Of a stretch of DNA of 64,000 bases, positions 1 to 49,321 are shown one piece after another. The notes under the pieces are model-generated. The model saw only the letters and a program-made list of their open reading frames with translations. It did not search any database and had not been told where the DNA came from. The translations under genes and the position numbers were made by a program. Location: IMG/VR virus record IMGVR_UViG_3300044632_001003, positions 62,001 through 126,000 of that record. One strand, 5' to 3'. Numbering within the stretch: position 1 is the stretch's first letter; every line of letters begins with the position of its first letter.

Positions 1-15
1 CTTCGAACTGAGAGT

Positions 16-74
16 ATTGTAGCAGGTCAGCGGCGGGCAGCGGCTAGCAGCAGGTCCAGTAGGACAACTGCCAC
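16..74 (-). promoter_or_regulatory. early promoter cassette (degenerate palindrome + -10 TACAAT)
   Basis: GGTCCAGT-N6-ACTGCCAC at 53-74, 31 bp from -10 at 16-21. Confidence 0.55.
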
Positions 75-242
75 AACCGCCTTCCAAAAGCCCAGGGCGG
101 TGATTCCAAACCACCCCAGCACCAGCACCAGGAGCCACGCTTTCAGGGCAACGACGCCAGCGACGCCAACGATCAGGATACCTGCCAGAGCCACCATCTG
201 CGGGGTGCTGAGGTCCTCAATCCAGGGGTAACGCTTGCTCAT
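27..242 (-). CDS. small hydrophobic/membrane early protein
   Basis: 71-aa ORF with two hydrophobic stretches; promoter cassette directly upstream (264-322). Confidence 0.7.
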   Translation of the reverse strand: MSKRYPWIEDLSTPQMVALAGILIVGVAGVVALKAWLLVLVLGWFGITALGFWKAVVAVVLLDLLLAAARR

Positions 243-263
243 GGGTGCCTTGCGGTTGAGAGT

Positions 264-322
264 ATTGTAAGGGGTCAGCGGTGCCCTTTGGGGCAGGGAG
301 TGGACAGTGCCTCAGGTGTCCT
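264..322 (-). promoter_or_regulatory. early promoter cassette
   Basis: TGGACAGT-N6-GGTGTCCT 301-322; -10 TACAAT 264-269; 31-bp gap. Confidence 0.7.
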
Positions 323-470
323 CATCCTCCCCCAGAATGAACCCATCAACCCATCCTGCTGTGTATCCGTCATCTTTGGTGAACAGGCGGATCTTAAGAA
401 GTTTGGCGATTGCAAAGGGCAAACCGATCACCAGGGCTCCAGGGATGAGAATGGCAAGCAGTTCGGTCAT
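312..470 (-). CDS. 52-aa membrane-anchored early protein (MTELLAILIPG...), below ORF-track cutoff
   Basis: hand translation; promoter 493-551 upstream; stop codon lies inside the 301-322 palindrome. Confidence 0.65.
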   Translation of the reverse strand: MTELLAILIPGALVIGLPFAIAKLLKIRLFTKDDGYTAGWVDGFILGEDEDT

Positions 471-492
471 GGGGTTCCTTTGAACTGAGAGT

Positions 493-551
493 ATTGTAGC
501 GGGTCAGCGGGCGATCAGGTCGCCTGCAGTGTACAGTGCCTGAGCTGTCAC
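493..551 (-). promoter_or_regulatory. early promoter cassette
   Basis: TGTACAGT-N6-GCTGTCAC 530-551; -10 TACAAT 493-498; 31-bp gap. Confidence 0.7.
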
Positions 552-671
552 ATGGCGGACGGGGCGAATCGGTTCCCATAGTATCCAGAGCAGCAGAGCG
601 GCAACGGTCAGGCGAAGCATGGTAGCACGGTGGAACTCAGGGGAACGGGAACGGGTCAGGGAGCGGATCAT
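504..671 (-). CDS. small hypothetical protein (probable start MIRSLT)
   Basis: 3' part of track ORF 504..758; ATG at 671 overlaps the TGA of the upstream ORF. Confidence 0.55.
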   Translation of the reverse strand: MIRSLTRSRSPEFHRATMLRLTVAALLLWILWEPIRPVRHVTAQALYTAGDLIAR

Positions 672-811
672 GCGATGTGAGCAGGGGAACCACAGGAACG
701 GTAGAATTCTACCATACGTTCCGCCTCTGCCAGGGTGGGGAACCATTGCGACCGCCACTCACAGTGGTTGTAGGGGACCTGGTAGCGGACTTCGTAGCGG
801 GTCAGTGCCAT
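668..811 (-). CDS. 47-aa hypothetical protein (MALTRYEVRYQVPYNHCEWRSQWF...)
   Basis: hand translation; resembles small early ORFs I recall from cyanomyophages. Confidence 0.65.
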   Translation of the reverse strand: MALTRYEVRYQVPYNHCEWRSQWFPTLAEAERMVEFYRSCGSPAHIA

Positions 812-905
812 GGGTCAGTTGAAAGACTTTGGGGTGGCGGGTCCGTGACCTCCCGCCTACGGGGTCAAGGGGTCTGTGGGGTTGCCCCCGCCGTTCCTCC
901 CCTTG
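812..905 (-). ncRNA. candidate structured 5' leader RNA (GNRA hairpin + H-type pseudoknot)
   Basis: AAGGGG/CCCCTT stem enclosing GGGG-GCAA-CCCC; crossing stems TGACC/GGTCA and GGCGGG/CCCGCC. Confidence 0.35.
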
Positions 906-913
906 TTGAACAT

Positions 914-972
914 AGTATGGCACGGCAGAGGGGGCAGGTCTATGGGGTGTGTGCCACATTCTGAACTGTCAC
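914..972 (-). promoter_or_regulatory. early promoter cassette
   Basis: GTGCCACA-N6-ACTGTCAC 951-972; -35 TAGACC, 17 bp, -10 CATACT. Confidence 0.75.
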
Positions 973-1553
973 AGCACCTCTTTGCCGAACTTGCCACACA
1001 GGTAGAATGCCATTCCTTTATCTTTCAGGGTGCAACCTGCAAAGGTGAGAGGAACATAGGCGCCGTTAGTTTTAGATGCTTTGGTGCGAATTTGCAGCAG
1101 TCCGTTAGGACCAGTGATGGTGCTCAGTTGCTCACCAGCATTGAACTTAGCACGAATGGTATCACAAATGTGGTTGTAATCCTCCGCCAGTTCCTGATAG
1201 TGTTCGGGGTGAGTTTCAGGGTTCAGAACCTCAGTGCCCACATAATCGTTGGAGCGGGTGAAACCAACGTAGATGGTTTGAGAGAGTTTCTCACCGACTT
1301 TGCTGTCAGCGAAACTAACACTATCCTCCAGAATCTCAGAGAGGCAATGCTTCAGTTGGGTGACAGCGATAGACTCACCAACCGTGAAGGTCTTCAGTTC
1401 TCCATCCACCAGATCTTTCAGGTTGGAACTGTTAGGAATGCCCAGGGCAGTTTCAATCAGTTGCCCACGGGATCCTTTGTTCTTCCCAGGTTTGGCGAAC
1501 GCAGCGAAGTTAGTTACCTTCAGTTGGGCAGCGACTTGCAGGGTGTTGAGCAT
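969..1553 (-). CDS. mutH: MutH/Sau3AI-family endonuclease
   Basis: motifs NKGSRGQLIE..LG, D..DGELK, LQIRTKAS and AFYL parallel MutH (DKG..G..LE, D..ELK, LQIRPKAA, GFYL); start moved to ATG 1553 downstream of promoter 1576-1633. Confidence 0.7.
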   Translation of the reverse strand: MLNTLQVAAQLKVTNFAAFAKPGKNKGSRGQLIETALGIPNSSNLKDLVDGELKTFTVGESIAVTQLKHCLSEILEDSVSFADSKVGEKLSQTIYVGFTRSNDYVGTEVLNPETHPEHYQELAEDYNHICDTIRAKFNAGEQLSTITGPNGLLQIRTKASKTNGAYVPLTFAGCTLKDKGMAFYLCGKFGKEVL

Positions 1554-1575
1554 CGGGTGCGTTGCTGATGAGATT

Positions 1576-1633
1576 AGTATAGGGCACCAGGGGCACCCCA
1601 CAAGGGGGTCTGTGCCACTTCAACGATTGGCAC
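1576..1633 (-). promoter_or_regulatory. early promoter cassette
   Basis: GTGCCACT-N6-ATTGGCAC 1612-1633; -35 TTGTGG; -10 TATACT. Confidence 0.75.
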
Positions 1634-2519
1634 ACTGGAAGCGACCGCTGTTGAAGTTAGCGTTAGAAAAGACCTCACGATTCACCAGTTTGAACATACC
1701 AAACTGATTCACCAGAACGTAACCCTCAGCGTCGATTCTGTTACCGTACAGATAAGCAGCAGGACCATCATTGCGGCAGAGGAACAGGCAGTCATCTTTG
1801 ATAGACTTCACCAATGCCCACAGACGCAGCAGGTTAGCATCACAATCAAAGTCCTCAGGATTCACCTCTTCACCAGCACGAATGCAGGCATTGATCTGTT
1901 GTTTGATCTTTGCCGCTTCCTTCTCACTCACAAAGGTGGCAGTTTGTGCCATCTGACGGGCGAACTTGCACACCTCTTCAACATCAGCGAACGACTCCTG
2001 ATTGTGCAGGATGTATGCATTCGGTTTCACGAACTTCACCGTTTCGGTATCAGTCCAGATGCTACGGTCAGGGAATGCCTGGGCGTCACGAAGATCGCTC
2101 TCAGCATAATAGCAAGTGTGCGGGGCGATGATAATTTTCTGGGAAACTACCTCACCGAACTTATACGTGATGGTGTTAGGATTGTATTCGGTATCACCAC
2201 CGAACCCAATGAAATCACCCTGATAGATGGTTTCGAAACGCGGCAGATAATCGAAGCAAGCGTGAAGAATGTCTGCTACGTTGCCTTCGTAGTGTTGATC
2301 AATGTCCTCATGATTGTGAGCAATACGAATCTTCTTTTTGTTGAACACTGCCTTGGTTCCTACAAAGAACTCACCGCAAGCAGGGTCAATCCCCCACACG
2401 ATGGCAGGGGCACCGTCGATCTTGACGCTCAGGGCACCAGGGGTCACGAACCAGTCCAGGACGCTCAGGTCGCCCGTGAGGATGGTATCTTCGGGGTGCT
2501 CTTGGTGCTTGTTCTGCAT
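1620..2519 (-). CDS. ligase-like nucleotidyltransferase (KxDG), DUF6267-like
   Basis: SVKIDGAP (motif I), YQGDF (III), AEGYVLV (IV), MFKLVN (V). Confidence 0.6.
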   Translation of the reverse strand: MQNKHQEHPEDTILTGDLSVLDWFVTPGALSVKIDGAPAIVWGIDPACGEFFVGTKAVFNKKKIRIAHNHEDIDQHYEGNVADILHACFDYLPRFETIYQGDFIGFGGDTEYNPNTITYKFGEVVSQKIIIAPHTCYYAESDLRDAQAFPDRSIWTDTETVKFVKPNAYILHNQESFADVEEVCKFARQMAQTATFVSEKEAAKIKQQINACIRAGEEVNPEDFDCDANLLRLWALVKSIKDDCLFLCRNDGPAAYLYGNRIDAEGYVLVNQFGMFKLVNREVFSNANFNSGRFQCANR

Positions 2520-39655: not shown

Positions 39656-42600
39656 TTATTTATCTGATAATTTTTGCTCAAGATCACCGACTCTTGCAGA
39701 AAGTTCTTTAACTGCTTCAACTAGAAGTGGAATAATCTTTTCATATCTAACAGCGAGATAACCATTGTCTCTTGTAGTTACTGCTTCAGGTAGAACCTCT
39801 AAGATTTCTTGTGCGATAACACCAACATCATTACCTTCTTTACCTGATTTCTCATTCCAAGTGTAAGTATTACCACTAATTGAAAGAACCTTAGCAAGAG
39901 GATCATCAATTGGGGTTATGTTATCTTTCAGTCTTTGGTCAGAAGTATAGAATGCAGTAATATCACCAGTTACATTTAGTTCTCCACTGATTGTAGTGTT
40001 GGTGCTGATTGAAACGCTGCTTCCAATCGAAGCATTGATAACTAGGTTTCCACCTCTTGTATCGATTGTTGTTGTTCCTGCAACACCAATTCTAATACCA
40101 TCAATGTAAGCCTCTTCAAATGCTCCACCAACAGTACCAATATAAGCACCCTTATCAACATCAGGAATAATACCAGTGTTAATTGTAACAATATCATCGA
40201 GAGTTGATTTTCCATCAACTCCAAGACCACCGCTTACAACTAATGCACCAGTTGTCTTACTTGTAGATTCAGTAACATTGGTAATTTTAACAATTCCAGT
40301 AATTGAAGCACTGTTTCTAATTCTGACTTCTTTATTAAAGGTTACAGGTCCATCAAACTGTGATAGAACAGTTCCAGACTTGCCACCCTCAACTCTTAGA
40401 CGCTCCTTAATTAGAACTTCATCAAAGATAACACTCAAACGACCACTTTCTTGTCCAGTGACAGTTGGTACTGGAACGTCAAAGGTAATTTCTTGCCCTG
40501 TTGCGGAACTAGATTTCTTATTACCAATATAGAAATCACCATCACTATTCATTCCAGTATATACAACAACACCAGCAGATCTCTTCTGAGATTGTGCTAA
40601 GAATGATTCTTTTTCTGTTAGTGATCTAACTTGTACTTGTGGGAGACCAGTTGAATAGTTACCAGGACCAAATCCAAGATATTCAAATGTATGACCAGAT
40701 GCACGAATGATTGAAGGTCTTCTCAGTTCGATTGCTAGTGGTCTAATCTTTCTAGCGATCGATCCTGTATTATGAGTTTCTTTACTCGTTCCAAATACAC
40801 CACGAATAACTACTAATTGATTATTTGAAGATCCAGTGAATTCTGATCCACTGATTCTCATGATTTCATTATCAACTTGAATATAAGAACCAAGTGGGAA
40901 TCTAGTCAGAGTTGAAAGACCACAAATAGTAGATCCAGAAACTGTTATGCTTGACCCAGACTCAATCGTTGCACCCAAGAAGAATTTCTCATTATCATAG
41001 AAGAATGTTCCTCTAGATGCTATATTTTCAGTGGTAGAATCTGAAACAGCATCATTTGAAGACAGTCCATGCTTGAGAATATATTTTGCAGAACTTAATG
41101 TAGTTGAAGTTGCGACAGTAAATGTATTAACACCTACTTTTTCATTAACAATATAATCACCAAGATTATTATTATTACTATCAATAAACTTAAATTTGGA
41201 ACCAGCTGTTAAATTATGTGCAAATGATGATGTAAATGTCGTAATTCCCAACACTGGACCAGCAACAGTTGTAACTGGAACTGATGGTCCAAGATTAATT
41301 ATATAATGACCAGTATGAATTTGTGGGTCTGCAGCAGTAATCGCTACAGAAATCTGAGTTTTTGAAGGAATAGATGCAATTCTGTAATACCCATCACCTG
41401 TTGTTCCAATACCAGTAACTTGAACAACATCTCCAAGGTTAGTCGAAATACCAGTTGAAGCGATTGTCAATCCAGCACCTACACCTACACCAATTACAGA
41501 TGTATCAAAATCTAGTTCTTCACCATCAGTATATCCAGATCCTCTGGAAAGAATCTTAACATCGGTGATTGTTCCACCACTGGATACAATAACCTTAGCA
41601 GTTGCTCCATCCCAAGTAGAAGTACCATTGTTAAAGAGTTTTACGTTATAATGTGTTCCAGCATTGTAACCACTACCACCAGAGAATGAACTATAAGTCG
41701 TAACACCTGCAAATCCATGCTCACGTCCAAGTGTAATCGTTGCAGTACCAGAATTTACGGAAGCAAAAGAAGTGGAAACTGCAACAATTGGTAGTCCAAT
41801 TCCAAAATCTTGTGTAAATAAATCTAGAGATTCTTTAGTAATACTCTTTTTAAGGTCATCAGTTACAACATCACCAATTGGACTTCTCTTTGCGTAAGTA
41901 TTTGCAGCAAAAGGATTGTCATCTACATTATCTTTATCAAGTTGTGGATATAAATCTGTTACATTTTGTGCATATTTTAAATTTGTAAATTCTTCAGGTA
42001 CGCTATTATTTGCGTTTAAGAGGTATGCATGATAGATACCATCTTGTACGTCCTTAATGTATGGACGAATGATTTCTGAACGATATACAAAATAATTTTT
42101 ATTTACATCACTTCTTTCGAATCTGGGTAGATTTGTATTTCTGGTTGCAGTATTACTTGTAAATGTACCTGGACTGTGAGTTACTCCAGTAACATCAACT
42201 GTCGAATATCTAAATGTATGGTCATCAACGATACCAGTAATTGCAAACTTACCATTATATCCCTCATTTGATAGTCCGCCAGTATTCGTGCTACTTCTAA
42301 CACTCTTAATATTAACTAGGTTTCCAACTTGTAAGTTATGTGGTAATTCAGTTGTTACAGTTACGATTCCTGTAGTACCAGTAATACATGTACTAATAAA
42401 TCTTGGATTTCTATGATAATCATAGTCAGTTGCACCAATACTTACTCTACCAGGATCTCCATCATTTCTATATCCAGTAGAACTTGATTCTTGAACAATA
42501 AATGTTTCTGCAGGTGCCTTAGCATTCTCTGCGTCTTTAGGTACAACAATTCTTATCTTATAGAGTTTCTCATCTAGACTTCTGGAATCATCAAATCTTT

Positions 42601-44938
42601 TTACGAAAGTGTTATCAGTTTTCTCACCCAGAATTCCAATACCATAAGTTGCAAATGCATTGTAAATTGGGTTGTTATGCGTACTGTGGATATACCAGTT
42701 TGAGCGGAAAGAGTCCCACTGTACTGGATGTCCTACATCTCCAGATGCTTTGTCAGAAACTCTACTCTGAATCTTGAGTTTTGATCCACCATATACTGTA
42801 ACTTCTACATTATTATCAGCATTTGCTTTTGATGAAGCTACTTTAATTGTTGTGCTGGACGAACGAATCGCATAATAAACTCTATGCGAAACAATATTTT
42901 CTGGGAGATCTCCATCATCACTTGTAATGTAAATACTTTCACCAGTTAAGATGTCATGTGCTCCGATAGTGAAAACATTACTAGTAGGACCTGAGGTTAC
43001 TCTATATTCCTTATAAGCTACGTTTGTTCCTAAAGCAGTGGTTCCAATGCCAATAACATTATTAACCATGCAGATATTAGCACCAAATGTGCCAATACCA
43101 CTTCCTAAATTAACATAAAGTTTGTCATCTCTTCTAGCACCAACTCGATATCCTTGAGTAAGAATAGGTGGGGAATCATCTTGGTTATTAAATCCATAAA
43201 GATAAAGATGACTTGAGATTCCAACAGAAGTTGTAAGTCCAACGTCTAGGGATTGCCAATCAATGTCTGCCTCATCAGATTTAACTGCTCTTGGACCAAC
43301 AATTGCAGAAATATAAGCCTTATTATCCTTGTCAAATGCTTCTGCTCTAAATCCATCAGAAGTTAGAGAGAATTGACCAAAGTTTGAGTTTGAGTTGGTA
43401 ATCGATGCGTCACCACCAGACTCGGTATTAAAATGGTTAGTAAATCCAATAGCAAACACAGATACAATCTGAATGATTGAATCATTCGACATTTTAATAT
43501 GATTGGTTTCCCAACCTGTTCTATAGACTGCGCTTGAATCTAAGTGATAGACTTTATCCTTATCTAAAGAAGAAGCACCTGCCGATAATTCTGCTCCCGT
43601 CTTTTTAGTAATAGTTATTGATTCGTAGTTTCTATCTACTTCATCATATTTTACAAATGCCCTATCATCTTTTTGTAGAGAAACACCTGTAAATTGTGCA
43701 ACAACCATTGAACGGAAACCTGATGCTTTGCTACCATCAGCGTACATTCCATTCATGCCATAAACTGATCTTAGCGAACAGTTGAAGACATAAGGAGAAG
43801 CACCAGAAACAGTATCCGTTTCAATCGTAACTGTTGCACCACTAACATCTGGAAGTGTTAGTAGATTTGGTTGAACATATGGGAGAACATATGTAAAGGT
43901 ATTTGCATTAATTACACTTTGTACCTTTGTAGAAATATTGTAATCATTTACTCCATCAGCAAGACCAACACCCTTAATCTTAATTGGTGTTCCTTCATTG
44001 AACTTATGTTCTAAAACAGTAGTTACTGTAATGATAGGACCAGCAGTTCCACCACTACCAGATTCAATTCTTGCAATCGTTAATGTATCAGCAGCGAACG
44101 CACCAACAATCTCCCATTCTGCTCTTTGCTTAGCGAATCCGCCTGCGTCATCTGGATATTTTTCTGGAATATCTCTTACCGAATTGAATGCATTTGACAA
44201 TTTGCTATAATACATGTCAAGATCGGTTAAATCATAACCGACCACTTCATTTACACCATCAGCATACTCAAAGCAAGTTAGTTTATGGTGAGAAAATGTT
44301 GGGACTGAACGATTATTTTCAGAAAAATCTATATTATCGGTATAAACAGTTCCAGTCTCACTACCATCAAAAATTGTAAATTGCCAAAGATAACAAGTAC
44401 CAGTTAGCCTAAAAATAGCAGATCGAGGAACATTTGAATCTGTGGGATTTGGTACATACTTTGGTCTTATTTTTGTTTTTCTTAGGTCTAAACCAACTAA
44501 TGATGTACCTCTTGGTATAATAACTCCACCATTAACGCTGTTAAATTTGTAGAGAATATTTCCAACTTGGTTAAGGTCAAAGTTAGAATCTAAATTGAGT
44601 GCAATCTGTTCGGATGGAGTTGAGATTGTACCCGAAGGTGACTTAACTTTTACACCAAGTGCGGGGTCATTATAAATCGCAAATCCTGGTCTATTATCAA
44701 TTAAATGCTCACCTGGAAAAAGTAAAATTGTAGTTTTTTCAATCGCATCATTATTATTACCTTTTAAGTATGAGAATCTTGCAGACTCTAGTAACGCCCT
44801 TTGTATTGTTTTAAATGGCTTAGCAAGAGAATTTCCTTGATTCTCGATGCTATCCGTTGCTTCAAGATCGTTTGGATTTACATATAGAATACGACCTTCA
44901 GTATTTTTAATAAAATTATCTAATTTATTAAGAGGCAT
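39656..44938 (-). CDS. large virion/tail fibre protein with an N-terminal beta-helix-type start and a C-terminal intramolecular chaperone (peptidase S74)
   Basis: YVNPND...PFKTIQRAL; C-terminal SDQRLKDNI...GVIAQEI...VRYEKIIPLLVEAVKEL; late promoter 44971-44977. Confidence 0.85.
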   Translation of the reverse strand: MPLNKLDNFIKNTEGRILYVNPNDLEATDSIENQGNSLAKPFKTIQRALLESARFSYLKGNNNDAIEKTTILLFPGEHLIDNRPGFAIYNDPALGVKVKSPSGTISTPSEQIALNLDSNFDLNQVGNILYKFNSVNGGVIIPRGTSLVGLDLRKTKIRPKYVPNPTDSNVPRSAIFRLTGTCYLWQFTIFDGSETGTVYTDNIDFSENNRSVPTFSHHKLTCFEYADGVNEVVGYDLTDLDMYYSKLSNAFNSVRDIPEKYPDDAGGFAKQRAEWEIVGAFAADTLTIARIESGSGGTAGPIITVTTVLEHKFNEGTPIKIKGVGLADGVNDYNISTKVQSVINANTFTYVLPYVQPNLLTLPDVSGATVTIETDTVSGASPYVFNCSLRSVYGMNGMYADGSKASGFRSMVVAQFTGVSLQKDDRAFVKYDEVDRNYESITITKKTGAELSAGASSLDKDKVYHLDSSAVYRTGWETNHIKMSNDSIIQIVSVFAIGFTNHFNTESGGDASITNSNSNFGQFSLTSDGFRAEAFDKDNKAYISAIVGPRAVKSDEADIDWQSLDVGLTTSVGISSHLYLYGFNNQDDSPPILTQGYRVGARRDDKLYVNLGSGIGTFGANICMVNNVIGIGTTALGTNVAYKEYRVTSGPTSNVFTIGAHDILTGESIYITSDDGDLPENIVSHRVYYAIRSSSTTIKVASSKANADNNVEVTVYGGSKLKIQSRVSDKASGDVGHPVQWDSFRSNWYIHSTHNNPIYNAFATYGIGILGEKTDNTFVKRFDDSRSLDEKLYKIRIVVPKDAENAKAPAETFIVQESSSTGYRNDGDPGRVSIGATDYDYHRNPRFISTCITGTTGIVTVTTELPHNLQVGNLVNIKSVRSSTNTGGLSNEGYNGKFAITGIVDDHTFRYSTVDVTGVTHSPGTFTSNTATRNTNLPRFERSDVNKNYFVYRSEIIRPYIKDVQDGIYHAYLLNANNSVPEEFTNLKYAQNVTDLYPQLDKDNVDDNPFAANTYAKRSPIGDVVTDDLKKSITKESLDLFTQDFGIGLPIVAVSTSFASVNSGTATITLGREHGFAGVTTYSSFSGGSGYNAGTHYNVKLFNNGTSTWDGATAKVIVSSGGTITDVKILSRGSGYTDGEELDFDTSVIGVGVGAGLTIASTGISTNLGDVVQVTGIGTTGDGYYRIASIPSKTQISVAITAADPQIHTGHYIINLGPSVPVTTVAGPVLGITTFTSSFAHNLTAGSKFKFIDSNNNNLGDYIVNEKVGVNTFTVATSTTLSSAKYILKHGLSSNDAVSDSTTENIASRGTFFYDNEKFFLGATIESGSSITVSGSTICGLSTLTRFPLGSYIQVDNEIMRISGSEFTGSSNNQLVVIRGVFGTSKETHNTGSIARKIRPLAIELRRPSIIRASGHTFEYLGFGPGNYSTGLPQVQVRSLTEKESFLAQSQKRSAGVVVYTGMNSDGDFYIGNKKSSSATGQEITFDVPVPTVTGQESGRLSVIFDEVLIKERLRVEGGKSGTVLSQFDGPVTFNKEVRIRNSASITGIVKITNVTESTSKTTGALVVSGGLGVDGKSTLDDIVTINTGIIPDVDKGAYIGTVGGAFEEAYIDGIRIGVAGTTTIDTRGGNLVINASIGSSVSISTNTTISGELNVTGDITAFYTSDQRLKDNITPIDDPLAKVLSISGNTYTWNEKSGKEGNDVGVIAQEILEVLPEAVTTRDNGYLAVRYEKIIPLLVEAVKELSARVGDLEQKLSDK

Positions 44939-45310: not shown

Positions 45311-45383
45311 TACCCGTGAGTGGATTCGAACCACCGCTTGGAACATTTTAAGTGTTCTGCCTCTTCCGCTGGGCTACACGGGC
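45311..45383 (-). tRNA. trnL: tRNA-Leu(UAA) with a short (5-nt) variable loop, no intron, no encoded CCA
   Basis: GCCCGTG/CACGGGT acceptor, GAACA-CTTAAAA-TGTTC anticodon arm, GGTGG-TTCGAAT-CCACT T arm. Confidence 0.85.
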
Positions 45384-45482
45384 GTGTATTTTTTGTTTGA
45401 TGCCGTGTGTTTGTGAGACTAAATCAAAACCGTTTGATAGATGCCCCACTGGATTCTATCATAAGTTTTGAACCACGACAAG

Positions 45483-45555
45483 TGCAGGTTGCGAGGATTG
45501 AACTCGCCTTCGCCGCTTTATGAGAACGGTCCATTCACCAGATTGGTAAACCTGC
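45483..45555 (-). tRNA. tRNA with CAU anticodon (Met or Ile2)
   Basis: GCAGGTT/AACCTGC acceptor, CCGTT-CTCATAA-AGCGG, GCGAG-TTCAATC-CTCGC. Confidence 0.85.
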
Positions 45556-45559
45556 ACGA

Positions 45560-45647
45560 TACGAGTGCCTGGATTCGAACCAGGTCAAAGCCGCTAATCT
45601 GGCGGAAAGAGTTTATAAGACTCCTCTGACTACCAAGTCTCACTCGC
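45560..45647 (-). tRNA. trnI: atypical tRNA with UAU anticodon (Ile), minimal D-arm and long variable arm
   Basis: GCGAGTG/CACTCGT acceptor, GACT-TGGT-AGTC, GGAGT-CTTATAA-ACTCT, CCGC/GCGG variable stem, CCTGG-TTCGAAT-CCAGG. Confidence 0.75.
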
Positions 45648-45655
45648 TTCTGCGT

Positions 45656-45829
45656 TTATGATGCCTCGTTGTTTAACTCAGTGTGTATTCGTATGAGGTC
45701 ATCATCCACAGGTATCATAACCGCTGCTTGCCCATTCTCGTTAATTATACCTAAATGCTCTCCATTTTCAACTCGTTCCATCAGTTCATCAAACCTCTCT
45801 TGAAACTCTTCCACAGTGAAAACTTCCAT
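45656..45829 (-). CDS. 57-aa Phd/YefM antitoxin-like protein
   Basis: hand translation MEVFTVEEFQERFDELMERVENGEHLGIINENGQAAVMIP... Confidence 0.6.
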   Translation of the reverse strand: MEVFTVEEFQERFDELMERVENGEHLGIINENGQAAVMIPVDDDLIRIHTELNNEAS

Positions 45830-45843
45830 TTTTGTGTTTTTAT

Positions 45844-46053
45844 TTAGTTGTTATCCTGACCATAAATTGCCAGGTCAGCATACTCAATCTGCTCAGGGTC
45901 AAGTTGAGCGGTGACAACTTCCAACACGTTCATAAACTCTTGAACAGTCTCACACTCCACCAGACGCTCACTACCCTGGTCGCTGAGAAGAAGGAAGGTG
46001 CGGGTGCAGACATCAATCACAATGCCTTGAACGGTCTCTTGTGCAATGCTCAT
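45844..46053 (-). CDS. hypothetical early protein
   Basis: 69-aa track ORF behind promoter 46079-46131. Confidence 0.75.
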   Translation of the reverse strand: MSIAQETVQGIVIDVCTRTFLLLSDQGSERLVECETVQEFMNVLEVVTAQLDPEQIEYADLAIYGQDNN

Positions 46054-46078: not shown

Positions 46079-46131
46079 ATTATAGGGCAGATGGGGGCGG
46101 GTGTCAAGTGTGCCAGTTTAAAAAGTGGTTA
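46079..46131 (-). promoter_or_regulatory. TTGACA-17-TATAAT promoter with an adjacent palindrome
   Basis: GTGCCAGT-N6-AGTGGTTA 46110-46131. Confidence 0.75.
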
Positions 46132-46705: not shown

Positions 46706-49321
46706 TTATGTCTTTATACAGGGTAGTAACGCATAGTTTCTTGGTCTTGTTTCATTACCAAAGTTACCGCCATTTGTAGCATTGGGAGATCCACTCTCAA
46801 TATTTGTTAGTGTTCCTGTCAATGTCGCAGTTCTTGGAATAGCATTAGTTCCACTATTGCTATACGTTGGAATATTATGAGTGTGAGTTTGATATTGGTG
46901 ATCTTGGAAACTAGCAAAAGTACGACCAGTATCAACAGATGAAGTATTTGCCCAACCTCTGATGAAATTTCCTCTTAAATCTGGAATATTAAAAGTGCTC
47001 ACTCCGTTTCCCGCACCCCAGGTTGTTCCAATAGCAGTAAAGAGAACATTATAAAGTCCTCTAGAAACAGCAGATCCGTCACACTCCAAATATCCACTTG
47101 GAGCAGTGTTTTTTGCAAACCAAAGAACAACTCCAGCGGCGACTGTTCCAGACCCAGCTTCTGTACCTTGAATACCTTGAATGCCCTGGATACCTTGAAT
47201 ACCTTGACCACCAACGAATCCACTAATTCCCTGGTTTCCTTGCAAACCCTGAACACCCTGAGGTCCAATATTACCCTGAATACCTTGGTTTCCAGTTCCA
47301 TTAATACCCTGGATGCCTTGCTCACCCTGGATACCTTGAATTCCCTGGATACCTTGAGAACCTAGGTCACCTCTAATTCCTTGGACACCTTGACGACCTT
47401 GAATACCCTGAGTTCCCTGAGATCCTACACCATTGTCACCTTGAATACCTTGGCGACCTTGAATACCTTGCTCACCTTGAAGTCCTTGAGCCCCTTGATT
47501 TCCATTATTACCTTGGATACCCTGACGACCTTGAATACCTTGAATACCTTGGAGACCCTGAACACCCTGAACACCCTGGAGACCTTGTTCCCCCTGGACT
47601 CCCTGAAGACCCTGGTTACCTTGTGGTCCAAAGTCTCCCTGAATACCCTGCAAACCTTGCCCACCAGTTCCACCAGTAGCACCTCCAGTTCCCTGGAAAC
47701 CTTGAATACCTTGTCTTCCTTGGTTACCCTGCGCTCCAGTTTCACCTTGAACACCTTGGCGTCCTTGAATACCTTGCTCACCCTGGATACCTTGAACACC
47801 CTGGATTCCCTGACGACCCTGAACACCTTGATATCCCTGAATACCTTGAATACCCTGGATACCTTGAATACCTTGATTACCAGCACCACCTATCTGTCCG
47901 CTGATGCCTTGAATACCTTGAGCGCCTTGAGCACCGTCATTACCCTGAATACCTTGACGACCTTGAATACCTTGGTTACCTTGGTTACCTTGGAAACCTT
48001 GAAGACCTTGGTTTCCTTGAGGTCCTTGAGCACCTTGAGTTCCTGGACCACCACCAATACCTTGAAGACCTTGGAATCCTTGGAATCCTTGGAATCCTTG
48101 TGGTCCCGCTGTTCCCTGAGTTCCTTGACGACCCTGAGAACCCTGAACACCTTGGTTTCCTTGAATACCTTGGACACCCTGGAAAGATGCATCATTAATA
48201 CTGATTTTCTTTACATCATCCGCAGAAAAATCATAAACTAGTAATAAATCTTGAAGTCCATCAGCACCAGTAATGAGTTGTTGCTCAGTAATTGCTTTTT
48301 TACTTACTCTTCCATCAAACAAAGTCGCCGTAATAATTCCAGAAGAAAATGTGTTTCCATAGATGGAAAAGTCTGCTCCAACTCCTAAGGTTGAAGTTCC
48401 AATACCAACTTTGCGGAAGGTTGAAATTCCAAGGAATGTAGAAACACCTGTTACTAACAATTCTTTGATTGTAACTGGTCCAGCAAATCCAGAACTACCT
48501 ACAACGTCAAAAACAAATCTTGGAGTTGTTGAACCTAGACCAACTCTTTGATTTGTATAATCATACCAAAAATTAGTTGCACCATCTACTAATCCAGCAG
48601 TTCCATGAAACTGAATTTGTCCGATTGTACCACCAGCACCAGATAGTGTTGCAGATTGAGATTGCCATTCAATACCAGTGATTGTCCTAATTAAAACCTC
48701 TCCTGGATTTCCTGGGTCATTGGTTGAGTCATAAATTGTTCCAGAAACTCTTACATCACCTTGAACGTGCAACTCCTGTGATGGGCTGGGAGTATTAATT
48801 CCAACATATCCCTCGGCAGTTGTCTTAATGATTGTTCCACCAATACCAACATGGAAGTAATGCCCGATGGTCATTATTCCAGTTACATTGTCAAAAAGCA
48901 AATATGGAGAAGCAGCAAAGGATCCATCATTATTAAAGATTATCTCATTATCATTCCCTGGAGGACTAATTGTAATTGTAGAAATTGTCCCGAAGTTATT
49001 TGCAGTTACATTGACAATATTTCCGACAAAATTTAACTTATTAATACTATTTCCTGTACCAACAATCGATCCTTCTTCAAAAACTGAAATACCTGTAACA
49101 ATTCCAGCAGGAGGAACTTGCCAATATCTATCATATTGACCGCCATTTTCAAAAGTTACAAGATTATAATAGTAATCCTTTACAGGCAAAGCCCTCTCAC
49201 CTGGATATCCAAGATTGGGTTCTGCCTCTTCTGGACTAAGAAATACGTGTCTATCTGTACTTAATCCAGAGAAGGGTGTTAATTTTTGCTTCCCGCTTAA
49301 ATATCTTTGCTTATTCCCCAT
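46706..49321 (-). CDS. collagen-like tail fibre with a C-terminal phage tail collar domain
   Basis: about 110 G-X-Y triplets (mostly G-x-Q); GVVLWFA..TAPSGYLECDGSAVSR...FNIPDLRGNFIRG. Confidence 0.88.
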   Translation of the reverse strand: MGNKQRYLSGKQKLTPFSGLSTDRHVFLSPEEAEPNLGYPGERALPVKDYYYNLVTFENGGQYDRYWQVPPAGIVTGISVFEEGSIVGTGNSINKLNFVGNIVNVTANNFGTISTITISPPGNDNEIIFNNDGSFAASPYLLFDNVTGIMTIGHYFHVGIGGTIIKTTAEGYVGINTPSPSQELHVQGDVRVSGTIYDSTNDPGNPGEVLIRTITGIEWQSQSATLSGAGGTIGQIQFHGTAGLVDGATNFWYDYTNQRVGLGSTTPRFVFDVVGSSGFAGPVTIKELLVTGVSTFLGISTFRKVGIGTSTLGVGADFSIYGNTFSSGIITATLFDGRVSKKAITEQQLITGADGLQDLLLVYDFSADDVKKISINDASFQGVQGIQGNQGVQGSQGRQGTQGTAGPQGFQGFQGFQGLQGIGGGPGTQGAQGPQGNQGLQGFQGNQGNQGIQGRQGIQGNDGAQGAQGIQGISGQIGGAGNQGIQGIQGIQGIQGYQGVQGRQGIQGVQGIQGEQGIQGRQGVQGETGAQGNQGRQGIQGFQGTGGATGGTGGQGLQGIQGDFGPQGNQGLQGVQGEQGLQGVQGVQGLQGIQGIQGRQGIQGNNGNQGAQGLQGEQGIQGRQGIQGDNGVGSQGTQGIQGRQGVQGIRGDLGSQGIQGIQGIQGEQGIQGINGTGNQGIQGNIGPQGVQGLQGNQGISGFVGGQGIQGIQGIQGIQGTEAGSGTVAAGVVLWFAKNTAPSGYLECDGSAVSRGLYNVLFTAIGTTWGAGNGVSTFNIPDLRGNFIRGWANTSSVDTGRTFASFQDHQYQTHTHNIPTYSNSGTNAIPRTATLTGTLTNIESGSPNATNGGNFGNETRPRNYALLPCIKT
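47160..48185 (-). repeat. 9-bp-period coding repeat of the collagen domain
   Basis: GAATACCTT/CCCTG repeats on the plus strand. Confidence 0.85.

What the first reader, a model, noticed from the sequence alone, without database searches (positions are those of the whole stretch)
45311..45647. tRNAs with swapped architecture: short-arm Leu(UAA) and long-arm Ile(UAU)
Seen: tRNA-Leu(UAA) has only a 5-nt variable loop, whereas bacterial tRNA-Leu is normally class II. The UAU tRNA has a single nucleotide between acceptor and D-stem, a 4-nt D-loop, an extendable anticodon stem and a ~23-nt variable region with a CCGC/GCGG stem; UAU is rare in bacteria and Ile tRNAs are class I. Inference: non-canonical identity (possible mischarging by Leu/Ser-RS), resistance to host tRNA nucleases, or a tRNA-like decoy.
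Basis: partly seen in the sequence, partly recalled or inferred. Interest (0 to 1): 0.6.

Follow-up and report, generated by a model that had tools for sequence, protein, structure and literature searches.

The report
Odd-shaped Leu and Ile phage tRNAs
A cyanophage carries a leucine tRNA without the usual long extra arm and an AUA-reading tRNA with an unexpected one; both belong to widespread mobile-element tRNA lineages and most likely decode normally, and the extra arm always displays a GAU-containing loop whose role is open.

Summary
The window is part of a 205-kb, 38% GC T4-like cyanophage.

Short-arm Leu(UAA):
- It is one member of a class I tRNA-Leu lineage.
- With the anticodon arm masked, its body matches only tRNAs with Leu anticodons: four kinds in cyanophages, six in bacterial tRNA arrays.

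88-nt UAU tRNA:
- It sits in the slot where related phages carry a normal class I tRNA-Ile(UAU). Each of five phage genomes has one type or the other.
- Acceptor, extra-arm and T stems covary.
- It belongs to a large family in phages and mobile bacterial tRNA arrays that resembles the 'allo-tRNA(UAU)' group of unknown function.
- Every member pairs the UAU anticodon with an extra-arm hairpin whose 7-nt loop reads Y-N-G-A-U-U-A.

In the phage's genes, AUA sits at Ile-type positions and UUA at Leu-type positions. This gives no support to an architecture "swap" or to recoding.

Best reading: both are working decoders of codons that are rare in GC-rich hosts. My hypothesis is that the GAU loop is a stand-in anticodon for host IleRS, which reads UAU poorly. 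This is untested. Charging and expression were not shown.

The parts
45311..45383 (-). Short-arm (class I) tRNA-Leu(UAA), 73 nt. Anticodon at 45348-45350, 5-nt variable loop at 45336-45340, G1.U72, A73, no encoded CCA.
   Evidence: ARAGORN. Rfam tRNA model, 56.6 bits. Compensatory changes against S-SKS1 and S-SRM01. The body is specific to Leu anticodons.
45482..45555 (-). tRNA(CAU), elongator Met or Ile2 (not resolved). It follows the UAU tRNA after a 4-nt spacer.
   Evidence: ARAGORN. Rfam, 49.2 bits. The UAU-CAU pair recurs in most related contigs. Public annotation of its relatives is split between Met and Ile.
45560..45647 (-). Long-arm tRNA(UAU), 88 nt, whole gene.
   Evidence: ARAGORN. 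Rfam tRNA 28.8 bits and tRNA-Sec 29.7 bits, both below threshold. The minimum-free-energy fold is the cloverleaf. Covariation. 100% identical over all 88 nt to the S-SRM01 copy.
45628..45640 (-). Single linker base A8 (45640) and the compact D arm GACU-UGGU-AGUC (45628-45639).
   Evidence: Sequence. Invariant in 16 distinct relatives. S-CRM01 has GAUG/CAUC at the same place, so two D-stem pairs change on both sides.
45606..45626 (-). Anticodon arm: 7-bp stem (three pairs are G.U) and loop CUUAUAA. Anticodon UAU at 45615-45617.
   Evidence: The anticodon is UAU in all 125 and all 142 matches of two scans that did not fix it, and in all 25 ARAGORN long-arm tRNAs of the extra-arm scan that share this loop pattern.
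45591..45605 (-). Extra-arm (variable-arm) hairpin CCGC-CAGAUUA-GCGG. Loop at 45595-45601, G-A-U at 45597-45599.
   Evidence: The stem covaries. Across 46 parsed family members, pair 1 is C-G in 45, pair 3 is C-G in 41, pairs 2 and 4 vary with compensation, and the loop is C-N-G-A-U-U-A in 45 of 46.
45585..45590 (-). 6-nt connector CUUUGA between the extra arm and the T stem.
   Evidence: Invariant in this sub-type. It differs in other sub-types: CGUGU, CGAGCG, CCUGG.
45560..45584 (-). T arm (45568-45584; 5-bp stem, loop UUCGAAU), acceptor 3' strand (45561-45567) and discriminator A73 (45560).
   Evidence: Four of the five T-stem pairs change on both sides and the fifth is invariant, so the arrangement is 7/5. 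A73 in 44 of 46 family members.
45656..45829 (-). 57-aa Phd/YefM-like antitoxin ORF. It ends 9 nt before the tRNA(UAU) gene.
   Evidence: Pfam PF02604, E = 1.5e-6, 28.3 bits, just under the cut-off of 29.8. Its relatives are annotated 'Phd-like antitoxin' in S-SKS1 and S-SM2 at the same position.
46079..46107 (-). Perfect sigma-70-like promoter match (TTGACA-17-TATAAT) upstream of the DUF7294 ORF, the Phd-like ORF and the tRNAs. Weaker matches lie at 45744-45771 (11 of 12) and 45453-45481 (9 of 12).
   Evidence: Consensus scan. These are pattern matches only, not evidence of function.

Best explanation
Both genes are working elongator tRNAs. An AT-rich (38% GC) T4-like cyanophage brings them to read A-ending codons (UUA and AUA) that are presumably rare in its Synechococcus-type hosts. 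The meaning of both codons stays standard.

(1) The 73-nt tRNA is a true tRNA-Leu of a short-arm (class I) lineage. It probably arose from class II tRNA-Leu by loss of the long arm. [quoted passage not shown]

(2) The 88-nt tRNA is the phage's AUA decoder. It belongs to a widespread phage and mobile-element family that resembles allo-tRNA(UAU). This family joins a UAU anticodon to a short extra-arm hairpin whose 7-nt loop carries G-A-U where an anticodon would sit.

My proposed mechanism is inferred, not shown. IleRS of bacteria that have TilS reads G34 or lysidine-34 well and U34 poorly. The extra arm may therefore offer IleRS a surrogate GAU determinant, or another Ile-specific handle, so that the UAU tRNA is charged with Ile without needing TilS.

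The adjoining tRNA(CAU) may keep AUG reading faithful. This is also inferred.
For: Anatomy and reality:
- Structure and covariation.

Leu:
- With the anticodon arm masked, the short-arm body scores 24 or more only with tRNAs bearing UAA, CAA, UAG or GAG (31 distinct sequences). The best non-Leu tRNA scores 21.
- The same body occurs with UAA, CAA, UAG, CAG, GAG and AAG in bacterial tRNA arrays: 42 short against 11 long.
- In related contigs the slot holds either a short or a long Leu(UAA).
- Its T arm and D loop resemble the class II Leu(UAG) of this and related phages.
- UUA codons (n = 1225) align with Leu in 54.8% of cases, like the other Leu codons at 54-64%.
- In E. coli tRNA-Leu, A73 is crucial and the anticodon and long arm are not. 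Variants that lack the long arm stay active (PMC9976931).

Ile:
- The order Phd-like gene, tRNA(UAU), tRNA(CAU) holds a 72-75-nt class I tRNA-Ile(UAU) in S-SM2, S-B05 and S-H68. S-T4 keeps the UAU-CAU pair, and P-RSM6 has class I Ile(UAU) in a different cluster. The window, S-SKS1 and S-SRM01 hold the long-arm form in that order, and S-CRM01 carries a diverged copy.
- Each of five whole phage genomes has exactly one UAU tRNA, of one type or the other.
- AUA codons (n = 759) align with I 44%, V 17.5%, L 11.1%. AUU gives 48.9/19.2/10.8 and AUC gives 52.9/16.5/12.3.
- The anticodon loop is YUUAUAN in 43 of 46 parsed members and A73 is present in 44 of 46.
- An anticodon-blind scan on the extra-arm loop and T loop gave 26 ARAGORN long-arm tRNAs. 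25 are UAU and one is GUC, whose GAUUAG lies in a longer loop. About 17 more UAU members were missed by ARAGORN.
- In bacteria the family often sits inside large tRNA arrays near Met(CAU) and Ile(GAU).
- The phage has no class Ia synthetase or TilS of its own.
- E. coli IleRS prefers LAU over UAU 360-fold, and the Trp behind this is conserved in species that have tilS (PMC3575796).
- A73 and the anticodon are the strong Ile determinants, and C29-G41 is a minor one (PMC9976931). The third pair of the extra-arm hairpin, the 29-41-like position, is C-G in 41 of 46.
Against: - No direct evidence of processing, CCA addition, charging or ribosome use. Metatranscriptome contigs hold the sequence but with flanks, which could be DNA or read-through.
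- The UAU tRNA falls just below Rfam's tRNA threshold and lacks the usual 8-14 and 15-48 core contacts.
- Mukai et al. found six allo-tRNA(UAU) variants inactive in an E. coli reporter and suggested a non-translational role (PMC5389517). That assay could only detect Ser or Ala.
- Six class I Ile(UAU) calls lie in the fetched parts of the related contigs beside the long-arm tRNA. This argues against strict redundancy.
- In ordinary tRNA geometry the extra arm lies far from where IleRS binds the anticodon, so the surrogate-anticodon idea needs an unusual docking.
- One long-arm UAU type (L221, L235) has no GAUUA loop.
- The codon test shows how the codons are used. It does not show which amino acid this tRNA carries.
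Confidence: 0.55

Rival explanations
1. The long-arm UAU tRNA does not act in translation. It is a tRNA-like RNA used as a decoy or substrate for tRNA-targeting toxins or nucleases, for a toxin-antitoxin or RNA-repair circuit, or as the landing site of a homing endonuclease.
For: - Mukai et al. found allo-tRNA(UAU) genes near toxin-antitoxin systems and saw no reporter activity.
- Here a Phd/YefM-like ORF directly precedes the gene.
- 43 of 145 related viral loci have an HNH endonuclease ORF within 1.5 kb.
- S-CRM01 has a leftover 3' fragment of a second copy beside an HNH gene.
- Bacterial copies lie near HNH (15 loci), TrwC relaxase (12) and RtcB RNA ligase (8).
- The extra-arm loop resembles a tRNA-Ile(GAU) anticodon loop and could bait an enzyme.
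Against: - It takes the slot and the single-copy role of an ordinary tRNA-Ile(UAU).
- It sits inside large tRNA arrays.
- It keeps U33, a purine at position 37, G18G19, a normal T loop and A73.
- The Phd-like ORF also precedes the ordinary class I version, so it is not specific to the long-arm form.
Confidence: 0.2
2. The long-arm UAU tRNA is charged with Leu (or Ser) because of its class II look. AUA would then be read ambiguously, as with the nematode nev-tRNA-Ile(UAU) or the Ser-inserting allo-tRNAs.
For: - It has a long extra arm and A73, the major LeuRS determinant.
- The nev-tRNA-Ile(UAU) is charged only with Leu in vitro (PMC3333845).
- Allo-tRNAs insert Ser at Leu codons in E. coli.
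Against: - AUA codons show no shift towards Leu (11.1% against 10.8-12.3%) or Ser (2.6%) at aligned positions.
- AUA makes up about 16% of aligned Ile codons, so mis-sense would be costly.
- The 4-nt D loop has no A14, A15 or A20a, which E. coli LeuRS needs.
- C2-G71 (E. coli tRNA-Leu) and A73 (human tRNA-Leu) are listed as antideterminants against SerRS.
- The family never carries a Leu or Ser anticodon.
Confidence: 0.12
3. Both shapes were selected mainly to escape host tRNA-targeting defences (anticodon nucleases and the like) while still decoding normally. On this view the extra arm and the missing arm are evasions, not identity devices.
For: From my own knowledge, phage tRNAs are reported to evade host anticodon nucleases through changes in the anticodon loop. 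I did not verify this here. Both lineages are confined to phages and mobile elements.
Against: - The anticodon loops are ordinary (CUUAAAA, CUUAUAA), so the usual cut sites are unchanged.
- The extra arm occurs only with UAU, which points to a problem specific to AUA rather than general evasion.
- No defence system is identified.
Confidence: 0.1
4. The UAU gene is a decaying or chance tRNA-like sequence.
For: Its score is below the Rfam threshold. It is not annotated in the S-SKS1, S-SRM01 or S-CRM01 records.
Against: It is 100% identical between distant phages, it shows compensatory changes in three stems, and it has hundreds of copies with an invariant anticodon.
Confidence: 0.02

Closest known systems
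allo-tRNA(UAU) group (Mukai et al. 2017, PMC5389517)
   Same: UAU anticodon, long extra arm, lengthened anticodon stem, D stem with a tetraloop, tRNA-Sec-like score, sporadic occurrence in Acidobacteria, and neighbours that are toxin-antitoxin or mobile-element genes. My genome scan found many Acidobacteriota copies with the same extra-arm loop.
   Different: Allo-tRNAs are defined by an 8/4 or 9/3 acceptor/T arrangement, and most have G73 or U73. This tRNA is 7/5 with A73. I could not compare sequences directly because no supplement is held. The GAU-containing extra-arm loop and a possible Ile identity do not appear in the sections of that paper that I read.
Class I cyanophage tRNA-Ile(UAU) (S-SM2, S-T4, P-RSM6, S-B05, S-H68)
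   Same: Same anticodon loop CUUAUAA and A73, often G1.U72, one copy per genome. S-SM2, S-B05 and S-H68 share the slot between the Phd-like ORF and tRNA(CAU). The 3' part (UGACCUGG...) is similar.
   Different: 72-75 nt, a normal D arm with a 2-nt linker, a 4-5-nt variable loop and no extra hairpin.
Nematode nev-tRNA-Ile(UAU) (PMC3333845)
   Same: A class II-shaped tRNA with a UAU anticodon.
   Different: It derives from tRNA-Leu and is charged only with Leu in vitro. The phage tRNA lacks the Leu-type D loop and shows no Leu signal at AUA codons.
Mycoplasma mobile tRNA-Ile2(UAU) (PMC3575796)
   Same: It decodes AUA with an unmodified UAU anticodon, without TilS.
   Different: There the synthetase changed (Arg865) to accept U34. 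Here the tRNA carries an added arm, and the five bacterial carriers tested all keep TilS.
Bacterial tRNA-Sec
   Same: 4-nt D loop, lengthened anticodon stem, long extra arm. The Rfam tRNA-Sec model scores slightly above the tRNA model (29.7 against 28.8 bits).
   Different: No 8/5 acceptor/T arrangement, a 4-bp rather than 6-bp D stem, anticodon UAU rather than UCA, A73 rather than G73, and a score far below the Sec threshold of 47.
Short-arm tRNA-Leu: human mitochondrial tRNA-Leu(UUR) and engineered E. coli tRNA-Leu without the long arm (PMC9976931)
   Same: Leu identity without a long variable arm, carried by A73 and the D/T-loop core.
   Different: Those are organellar or artificial. This is a natural lineage in phages and bacterial mobile tRNA arrays that covers up to six Leu anticodons.

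Membership tests
Canonical elongator tRNA (Rfam RF00005) | Score at or above the family's gathering score of 29 bits | tested here: met
   Leu(UAA) scores 56.6 bits and tRNA(CAU) scores 49.2 bits.
Canonical elongator tRNA (Rfam RF00005) | The same threshold, applied to the UAU tRNA | tested here: not met
   28.8 bits against a threshold of 29. ARAGORN does call it.
Class II tRNA-Leu (bacterial) | Long variable arm (stem-loop) between the anticodon and T arms | tested here: not met
   Leu(UAA) has a 5-nt variable loop. It is therefore a class I tRNA-Leu.
tRNA-Leu (identity) | A73 discriminator, G18G19 paired with the T loop, Leu-type D loop | tested here: inconclusive
   A73 and GG are present. 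The family D loop AAYYGGNAG matches the phage's own class II Leu(UAG). The window copy has G15 rather than A15. Charging was not testable.
tRNA-Leu (identity) | The body is linked only with Leu anticodons | tested here: met
   UAA, CAA, UAG and GAG only, at score 24 or more. Six Leu anticodons in bacterial arrays.
allo-tRNA (Mukai et al. 2017) | 12-bp acceptor branch arranged 8/4 or 9/3 | tested here: not met
   7-bp acceptor stem and 5-bp T stem. Four of the five T-stem pairs show compensatory changes. A8 has no partner.
allo-tRNA (Mukai et al. 2017) | tRNA-Sec-like D arm (long stem with tetraloop), longer anticodon stem, long V arm | tested here: met
   Tetraloop UGGU, although the D stem has only 4 bp. 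7-bp anticodon stem. 15-nt extra-arm hairpin.
allo-tRNA (Mukai et al. 2017) | Discriminator G73 or U73 in most members (Ser-like) | tested here: not met
   A73 in the window and in 44 of 46 parsed family members.
tRNA-Sec (Rfam RF01852) | Gathering score of 47 bits, UCA anticodon, 8/5 arrangement | tested here: not met
   29.7 bits, anticodon UAU, 7/5 arrangement.
tRNA-Ile (bacterial identity set, PMC9976931) | A73, A35, U36, A37 (t6A site) and A38 | tested here: met
   Loop CUUAUAA and A73. The loop is YUUAUAN in 43 of 46 members.
tRNA-Ile (bacterial identity set, PMC9976931) | G34 or lysidine-34; minor determinants C4-G69, U12-A/G23, C29-G41; D-loop G16, D20, D21 | tested here: not met
   U34, A4-U69, D-stem pair C-G at 12-23, A29-U41, and a 4-nt D loop. 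G-A-U and a C-G pair at the 29-41-like position are found in the extra-arm hairpin instead.
tRNA-Ile (function) | Charged with Ile and used at AUA codons | not testable with these tools
   Indirect evidence only: slot replacement and codon use.

The most novel reading that the evidence does not exclude
The extra arm is a relocated identity element. It would be a small copy of the tRNA-Ile(GAU) anticodon stem-loop (C-G closing pair, C-G third pair, loop Y-N-G-A-U-U-A) that host IleRS, or an Ile-specific partner, reads in place of the true anticodon. A UAU tRNA carried by phages and mobile elements could then be charged with Ile in hosts whose IleRS rejects U34. It would also explain the function of the orphan allo-tRNA(UAU) group.
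Probability: 0.3. Interest if true: 0.85.

Novelty: new variant of a known kind. Interest (0 to 1): 0.62.

Why it matters
AUA is a hard codon for bacteria. It normally needs a lysidine-modified tRNA made by TilS, and IleRS reads a plain UAU anticodon poorly.

A widespread tRNA(UAU) carried by phages and mobile elements, always with a GAU-displaying extra arm, would be a new solution to that problem. It would be the first natural case of an anticodon-like identity signal placed outside the anticodon. It would also give a testable function to the most abundant and so far unexplained allo-tRNA group.

The short-arm tRNA-Leu lineage shows that the 'class II' rule for bacterial tRNA-Leu is broken routinely in mobile tRNA sets.

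There is a practical point as well. The UAU tRNA falls just below Rfam's tRNA threshold and is missing from three reference phage annotations, so tRNA inventories of phages are probably undercounted.

Tried and rejected
1. Alternative fold pairing UCAGAG (end of the D arm and start of the anticodon stem) with the connector CUUUGA. It is complementary in the window type. S-CRM01 (UCGUGG against CGUGU) and other sub-types do not support it, and the minimum-free-energy fold is the cloverleaf.

2. Pairing of the extra-arm loop GAUUA with the D-arm 3' strand UAGUC or with the T loop. Neither is conserved in S-CRM01-type members.

3. Recoding of AUA or UUA. The codon-by-codon comparison with S-SM2, P-RSM6 and S-T4 orthologues showed standard use. 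No alternative genetic code was used anywhere.

4. 8/4 or 9/3 arrangement. Rejected by T-stem covariation.

5. Descent of the long-arm tRNA from phage class II Leu, Ser or Tyr. Global alignment scores are 15 or less out of 88.

6. RNA evidence. One sequencing-run search and one lay of 411 letters gave only contigs with varied flanks from four metatranscriptomes. There was no CCA end and no information on RNA ends or strand. The result is inconclusive.

7. Replacement of TilS. All five bacterial carriers tested keep TilS.

8. Prevalence. Of 151 genomes sampled from the class of one acidobacterial carrier (that carrier included), it was the only one with a true copy. The three other pattern hits are not such tRNAs.

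9. Literature. Ten searches found no paper on phage long-arm tRNA(UAU), on a GAU-like extra-arm loop, or on short-arm tRNA-Leu in phages. The held library is incomplete.

10. The large protein searches, structure prediction and complex prediction were not used. The question concerns RNA.
Full report
**What is there**

The window is bases 62001-126000 of a 205-kb IMG/VR virus record with 38.2% GC, estimated 96% complete. Its nearest named relatives at this locus are the Synechococcus phages S-SKS1 and S-SRM01.

ARAGORN finds three minus-strand tRNAs in the window:
- tRNA(UAA), 45311-45383, 73 nt
- tRNA(CAU), 45482-45555
- tRNA(UAU), 45560-45647, 88 nt

The whole phage has 11 tRNAs. Apart from Asn(GUU) and the CAU tRNA, they all have U at the wobble position. 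They include a normal class II Leu(UAG) of 80 nt and a Ser(UGA) of 86 nt.

Rfam scores the UAA tRNA at 56.6 bits and the CAU tRNA at 49.2 bits. The UAU tRNA reaches 28.8 bits on the tRNA model, whose threshold is 29. It reaches 29.7 bits on the tRNA-Sec model, whose threshold is 47.

- Leu(UAA) has a 5-nt variable loop.
- The UAU tRNA has a 7-bp acceptor stem, one linker base, a 4-bp D stem with the tetraloop UGGU and a 7-bp anticodon stem with loop CUUAUAA.
- It then has an extra-arm hairpin CCGC-CAGAUUA-GCGG, a 6-nt connector, a 5-bp T stem and A73.
- The minimum-free-energy fold is exactly this structure.

**Is it more than chance?**

The same trio of tRNAs occurs in S-SKS1 and S-SRM01. Compensatory changes are visible in the acceptor, extra-arm and T stems of the UAU tRNA, and in the anticodon and T stems of the Leu tRNA.

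- The S-SRM01 copy of the UAU tRNA is identical over all 88 nt, although the flanks are only about 80-88% identical.
All 125 and all 142 matches have UAU.
- On 16 distinct sequences, 99.8% of cells pair and 9 pairs change on both sides. Slid controls give 40-43% pairing.
- The D and anticodon stems never vary within this sub-type. The diverged S-CRM01 copy has GAUG/CAUC where the window has GACU/AGUC, which supports the D stem.

**The short-arm Leu tRNA**

Related contigs carry either short (73-77 nt) or long (82-88 nt) Leu(UAA) genes in the same neighbourhood.

- With the anticodon arm masked, the short-arm body is matched at score 24 or more by 31 distinct tRNAs. All carry Leu anticodons: 24 UAA, 2 CAA, 3 UAG and 2 GAG. 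The best tRNA of any other isotype scores 21.
- Two contigs carry tandem short-arm Leu genes for three or all four of these anticodons.
- The same body appears with six Leu anticodons in bacterial tRNA arrays, 42 short against 11 long.

A body tied to Leu anticodons from both Leu codon boxes must carry Leu identity itself. This fits an enzyme that ignores the anticodon.

Its T arm and D loop (AAYYGGNAG) resemble the class II Leu(UAG) of this and related phages. Descent by loss of the arm is therefore likely (inference).

For E. coli LeuRS, A73 and the D/T-loop core are decisive. The anticodon and the long arm are dispensable (PMC9976931).

UUA codons of the phage align with Leu in 54.8% of cases in orthologues, within the 54-64% range of the other Leu codons. 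I therefore read this gene as an ordinary UUA/UUG decoder with an unusual but recurrent shape.

**The long-arm UAU tRNA: place and codon use**

- In S-SM2, S-B05 and S-H68, the order Phd-like ORF, tRNA(UAU), tRNA(CAU) holds a normal 74-nt tRNA-Ile(UAU).
- S-T4 keeps the UAU-CAU pair, and P-RSM6 has class I Ile(UAU) in a different cluster.
- In the window, S-SKS1 and S-SRM01, the same order holds the long-arm form. S-CRM01 carries a diverged long-arm copy.
- Each of five complete genomes has exactly one UAU tRNA, of one type or the other.
- P-RSM6 has only three tRNAs: Leu(UAA), Arg(UCU) and Ile(UAU). These are the decoders an AT-rich phage would most need if, as I assume, its host genome is GC-rich.
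- Six class I Ile(UAU) calls lie in the fetched parts of the related contigs, beside the long-arm tRNA.

I aligned the phage's ORFs with those of three phages that carry class I tRNA-Ile(UAU) (250 high-scoring pairs). AUA codons (n = 759) face I 44.0%, V 17.5% and L 11.1%. AUU gives 48.9/19.2/10.8 and AUC gives 52.9/16.5/12.3. Leu codons face L in 54-64% of cases and Ser codons face S in 38-44%. S-CRM01 gives the same picture.

AUA is therefore used as Ile, and it makes up about 16% of aligned Ile codons. The phage encodes no class Ia synthetase and no TilS, so host enzymes must do the work.

**The wider family**

I ran a scan that specified only the extra-arm loop (GATTAG...) and the T loop.

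- It gave 26 ARAGORN long-arm tRNAs. 25 have the anticodon UAU and one has GUC, where GAUUAG lies in a longer loop. About 17 further UAU members were missed by ARAGORN.
- They come from very different phages, and many have an encoded CCA.
- Sub-types differ in acceptor stem, linker (1 or 2 nt) and D arm (tetraloop or normal).
- All share YUUAUAN, A73 and a 3-5-bp extra-arm stem capped by Y-N-G-A-U-(U/C)-A.

In 46 parsed members:
- the closing pair is C-G in 45;
- the third pair is C-G in 41;
- pairs 2 and 4 vary with compensation;
- the stem is 4 bp.

The hits lie in Acidobacteriota, Rhodobacterales (Ruegeria, Sulfitobacter, Roseovarius, Shimia), Hyphomicrobiales, Elusimicrobia and other groups. 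The Ruegeria type has the same build as the window's tRNA.

- In bacteria the gene often sits inside large tRNA arrays near Met(CAU) and Ile(GAU).
- Recurrent neighbours are HNH endonuclease (15 loci), TrwC relaxase (12) and RtcB (8).
- Five of five carriers tested have TilS.
- In a sample of 151 genomes from the class of one acidobacterial carrier (that carrier included), it was the only one with a true copy.

The tRNA is therefore an accessory, mobile gene.

**Comparison with what is known**

Mukai et al. (PMC5389517) described 'allo-tRNAs' with 8/4 or 9/3 arrangements.
- The UAU group is the most abundant.
- It has irregular cloverleaves and lies near toxin-antitoxin genes.
- Six variants converted to amber suppressors gave no chloramphenicol resistance in a reporter that tolerates only Ser or Ala.
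- The authors suggested that the UAU group may not serve translation.

That assay could not have detected Ile.

The window's tRNA shares the look of this group but fails its defining feature. It is 7/5, with four of the five T-stem pairs covarying, and it has A73 rather than G73 or U73. I could not compare sequences because no supplement is held.

Nematode nev-tRNA-Ile(UAU) is the other class II-shaped UAU tRNA. It is charged with Leu in vitro.

**Proposed mechanism**

What is shown:
- the structure;
- the invariant anticodon;
- the exclusive pairing of the GAU-bearing extra arm with UAU;
- standard codon use;
- replacement of the ordinary tRNA-Ile(UAU) in its slot.

What is established elsewhere:
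- IleRS relies on A73 and the anticodon, with G34 or lysidine-34 as determinants and C29-G41 as a minor one.
- E. coli IleRS prefers LAU over UAU 360-fold, through a Trp conserved in species that have tilS.

What I infer: the extra-arm hairpin places G-A-U at the anticodon-like positions of a 7-nt loop on a stem with C-G at the first and third pairs. It may act as a surrogate Ile determinant, so the mobile tRNA is charged with Ile without TilS.

- U37' in place of A37, and a variable base at position 33', would keep that loop from being modified or from decoding.
- The geometry is a real difficulty.
- One long-arm UAU type lacks the motif.

I give 0.55 to 'both tRNAs decode canonically' and about 0.3 to the surrogate-anticodon step.

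**Limits**

- Nothing here shows expression, processing or charging.
- The RNA data are contigs only.
- The promoters are consensus matches.
- The codon test measures how the phage uses the codons, not what this tRNA carries.

- Read laying received 411 letters.
- No alternative genetic code was used.

Noticed in passing
window 45482-45555 (-): The tRNA(CAU) follows the UAU tRNA after 4 nt, here and in most related contigs (105 CAU calls against 114 long-arm UAU calls). Public records annotate the same relative as Met in some phages and Ile in others. It is not an initiator type (G1-C72, no run of three G-C pairs in the anticodon stem). Whether it is Met or Ile2 is unresolved.
   Followed up: partly
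window 45656-45829 (-): A 57-aa Phd/YefM-like antitoxin ORF ends 9 nt before the tRNA cluster. No toxin partner is nearby. The same ORF precedes both the class I and the long-arm tRNA(UAU) in other cyanophages. Allo-tRNA genes have also been reported near toxin-antitoxin systems.
   Followed up: partly
L002 1784-2203; L137 865-1413 and 1494-1560; 43 of 145 IMG/VR loci: HNH endonuclease ORFs lie beside the long-arm tRNA in S-SRM01, S-CRM01 and 30% of related viral loci. S-CRM01 also keeps a 3' fragment of a second, window-type copy just downstream. This suggests spread or replacement by homing.
   Followed up: partly
L221, L222, L223, L235, L237, L247, L258, L260, L269 (IMG/VR contigs): Nine class I phage tRNAs have the anticodon loop CUGAUUA or CCGAUUA: anticodon GAU with U37 in place of the near-universal purine. 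This is the same stem-loop sequence as the extra-arm hairpin (for example GCCGC-CUGAUUA-GCGGC). Unexplained.
   Followed up: no
L287-L406 (bacterial contigs): The long-arm tRNA(UAU) and the short-arm tRNA-Leu travel together in large bacterial tRNA arrays (Acidobacteriota, Rhodobacterales and others). RtcB RNA ligase lies about 450 nt away on the same strand in 8 loci, and TrwC relaxase is nearby in 12.
   Followed up: partly
L001, L002, L137 (RefSeq records of S-SKS1, S-SRM01, S-CRM01): The long-arm tRNA(UAU) is not annotated in any of the three reference genomes. S-SRM01 lacks all three tRNAs of the cluster in its annotation, and S-SKS1 lists only tRNA-Leu there.
   Followed up: yes
window 46079-46107 (-): A perfect sigma-70 consensus (TTGACA, 17 nt, TATAAT) lies upstream of a DUF7294 ORF (45844-46053), the Phd-like ORF and the tRNAs.
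   Followed up: no
window 39656-44938 (-) and 46706-49321 (-): The cluster sits between two tail-fibre-type genes. One is a 1760-aa protein with a C-terminal Peptidase_S74 chaperone domain. The other is an 871-aa protein with collagen repeats and a phage tail collar domain.
   Followed up: no
window 1-2000: The first 2 kb have 54.5% GC against about 38% for the rest of the phage. This may be a host-derived gene.
   Followed up: no
L221 7428-7519; L235 6374-6465: A long-arm UAU tRNA type has an extra arm without the GAUUA loop (GGCC-GGACU-GGCU region). It lies in the same contigs as a U37 tRNA(GAU).
   Followed up: no
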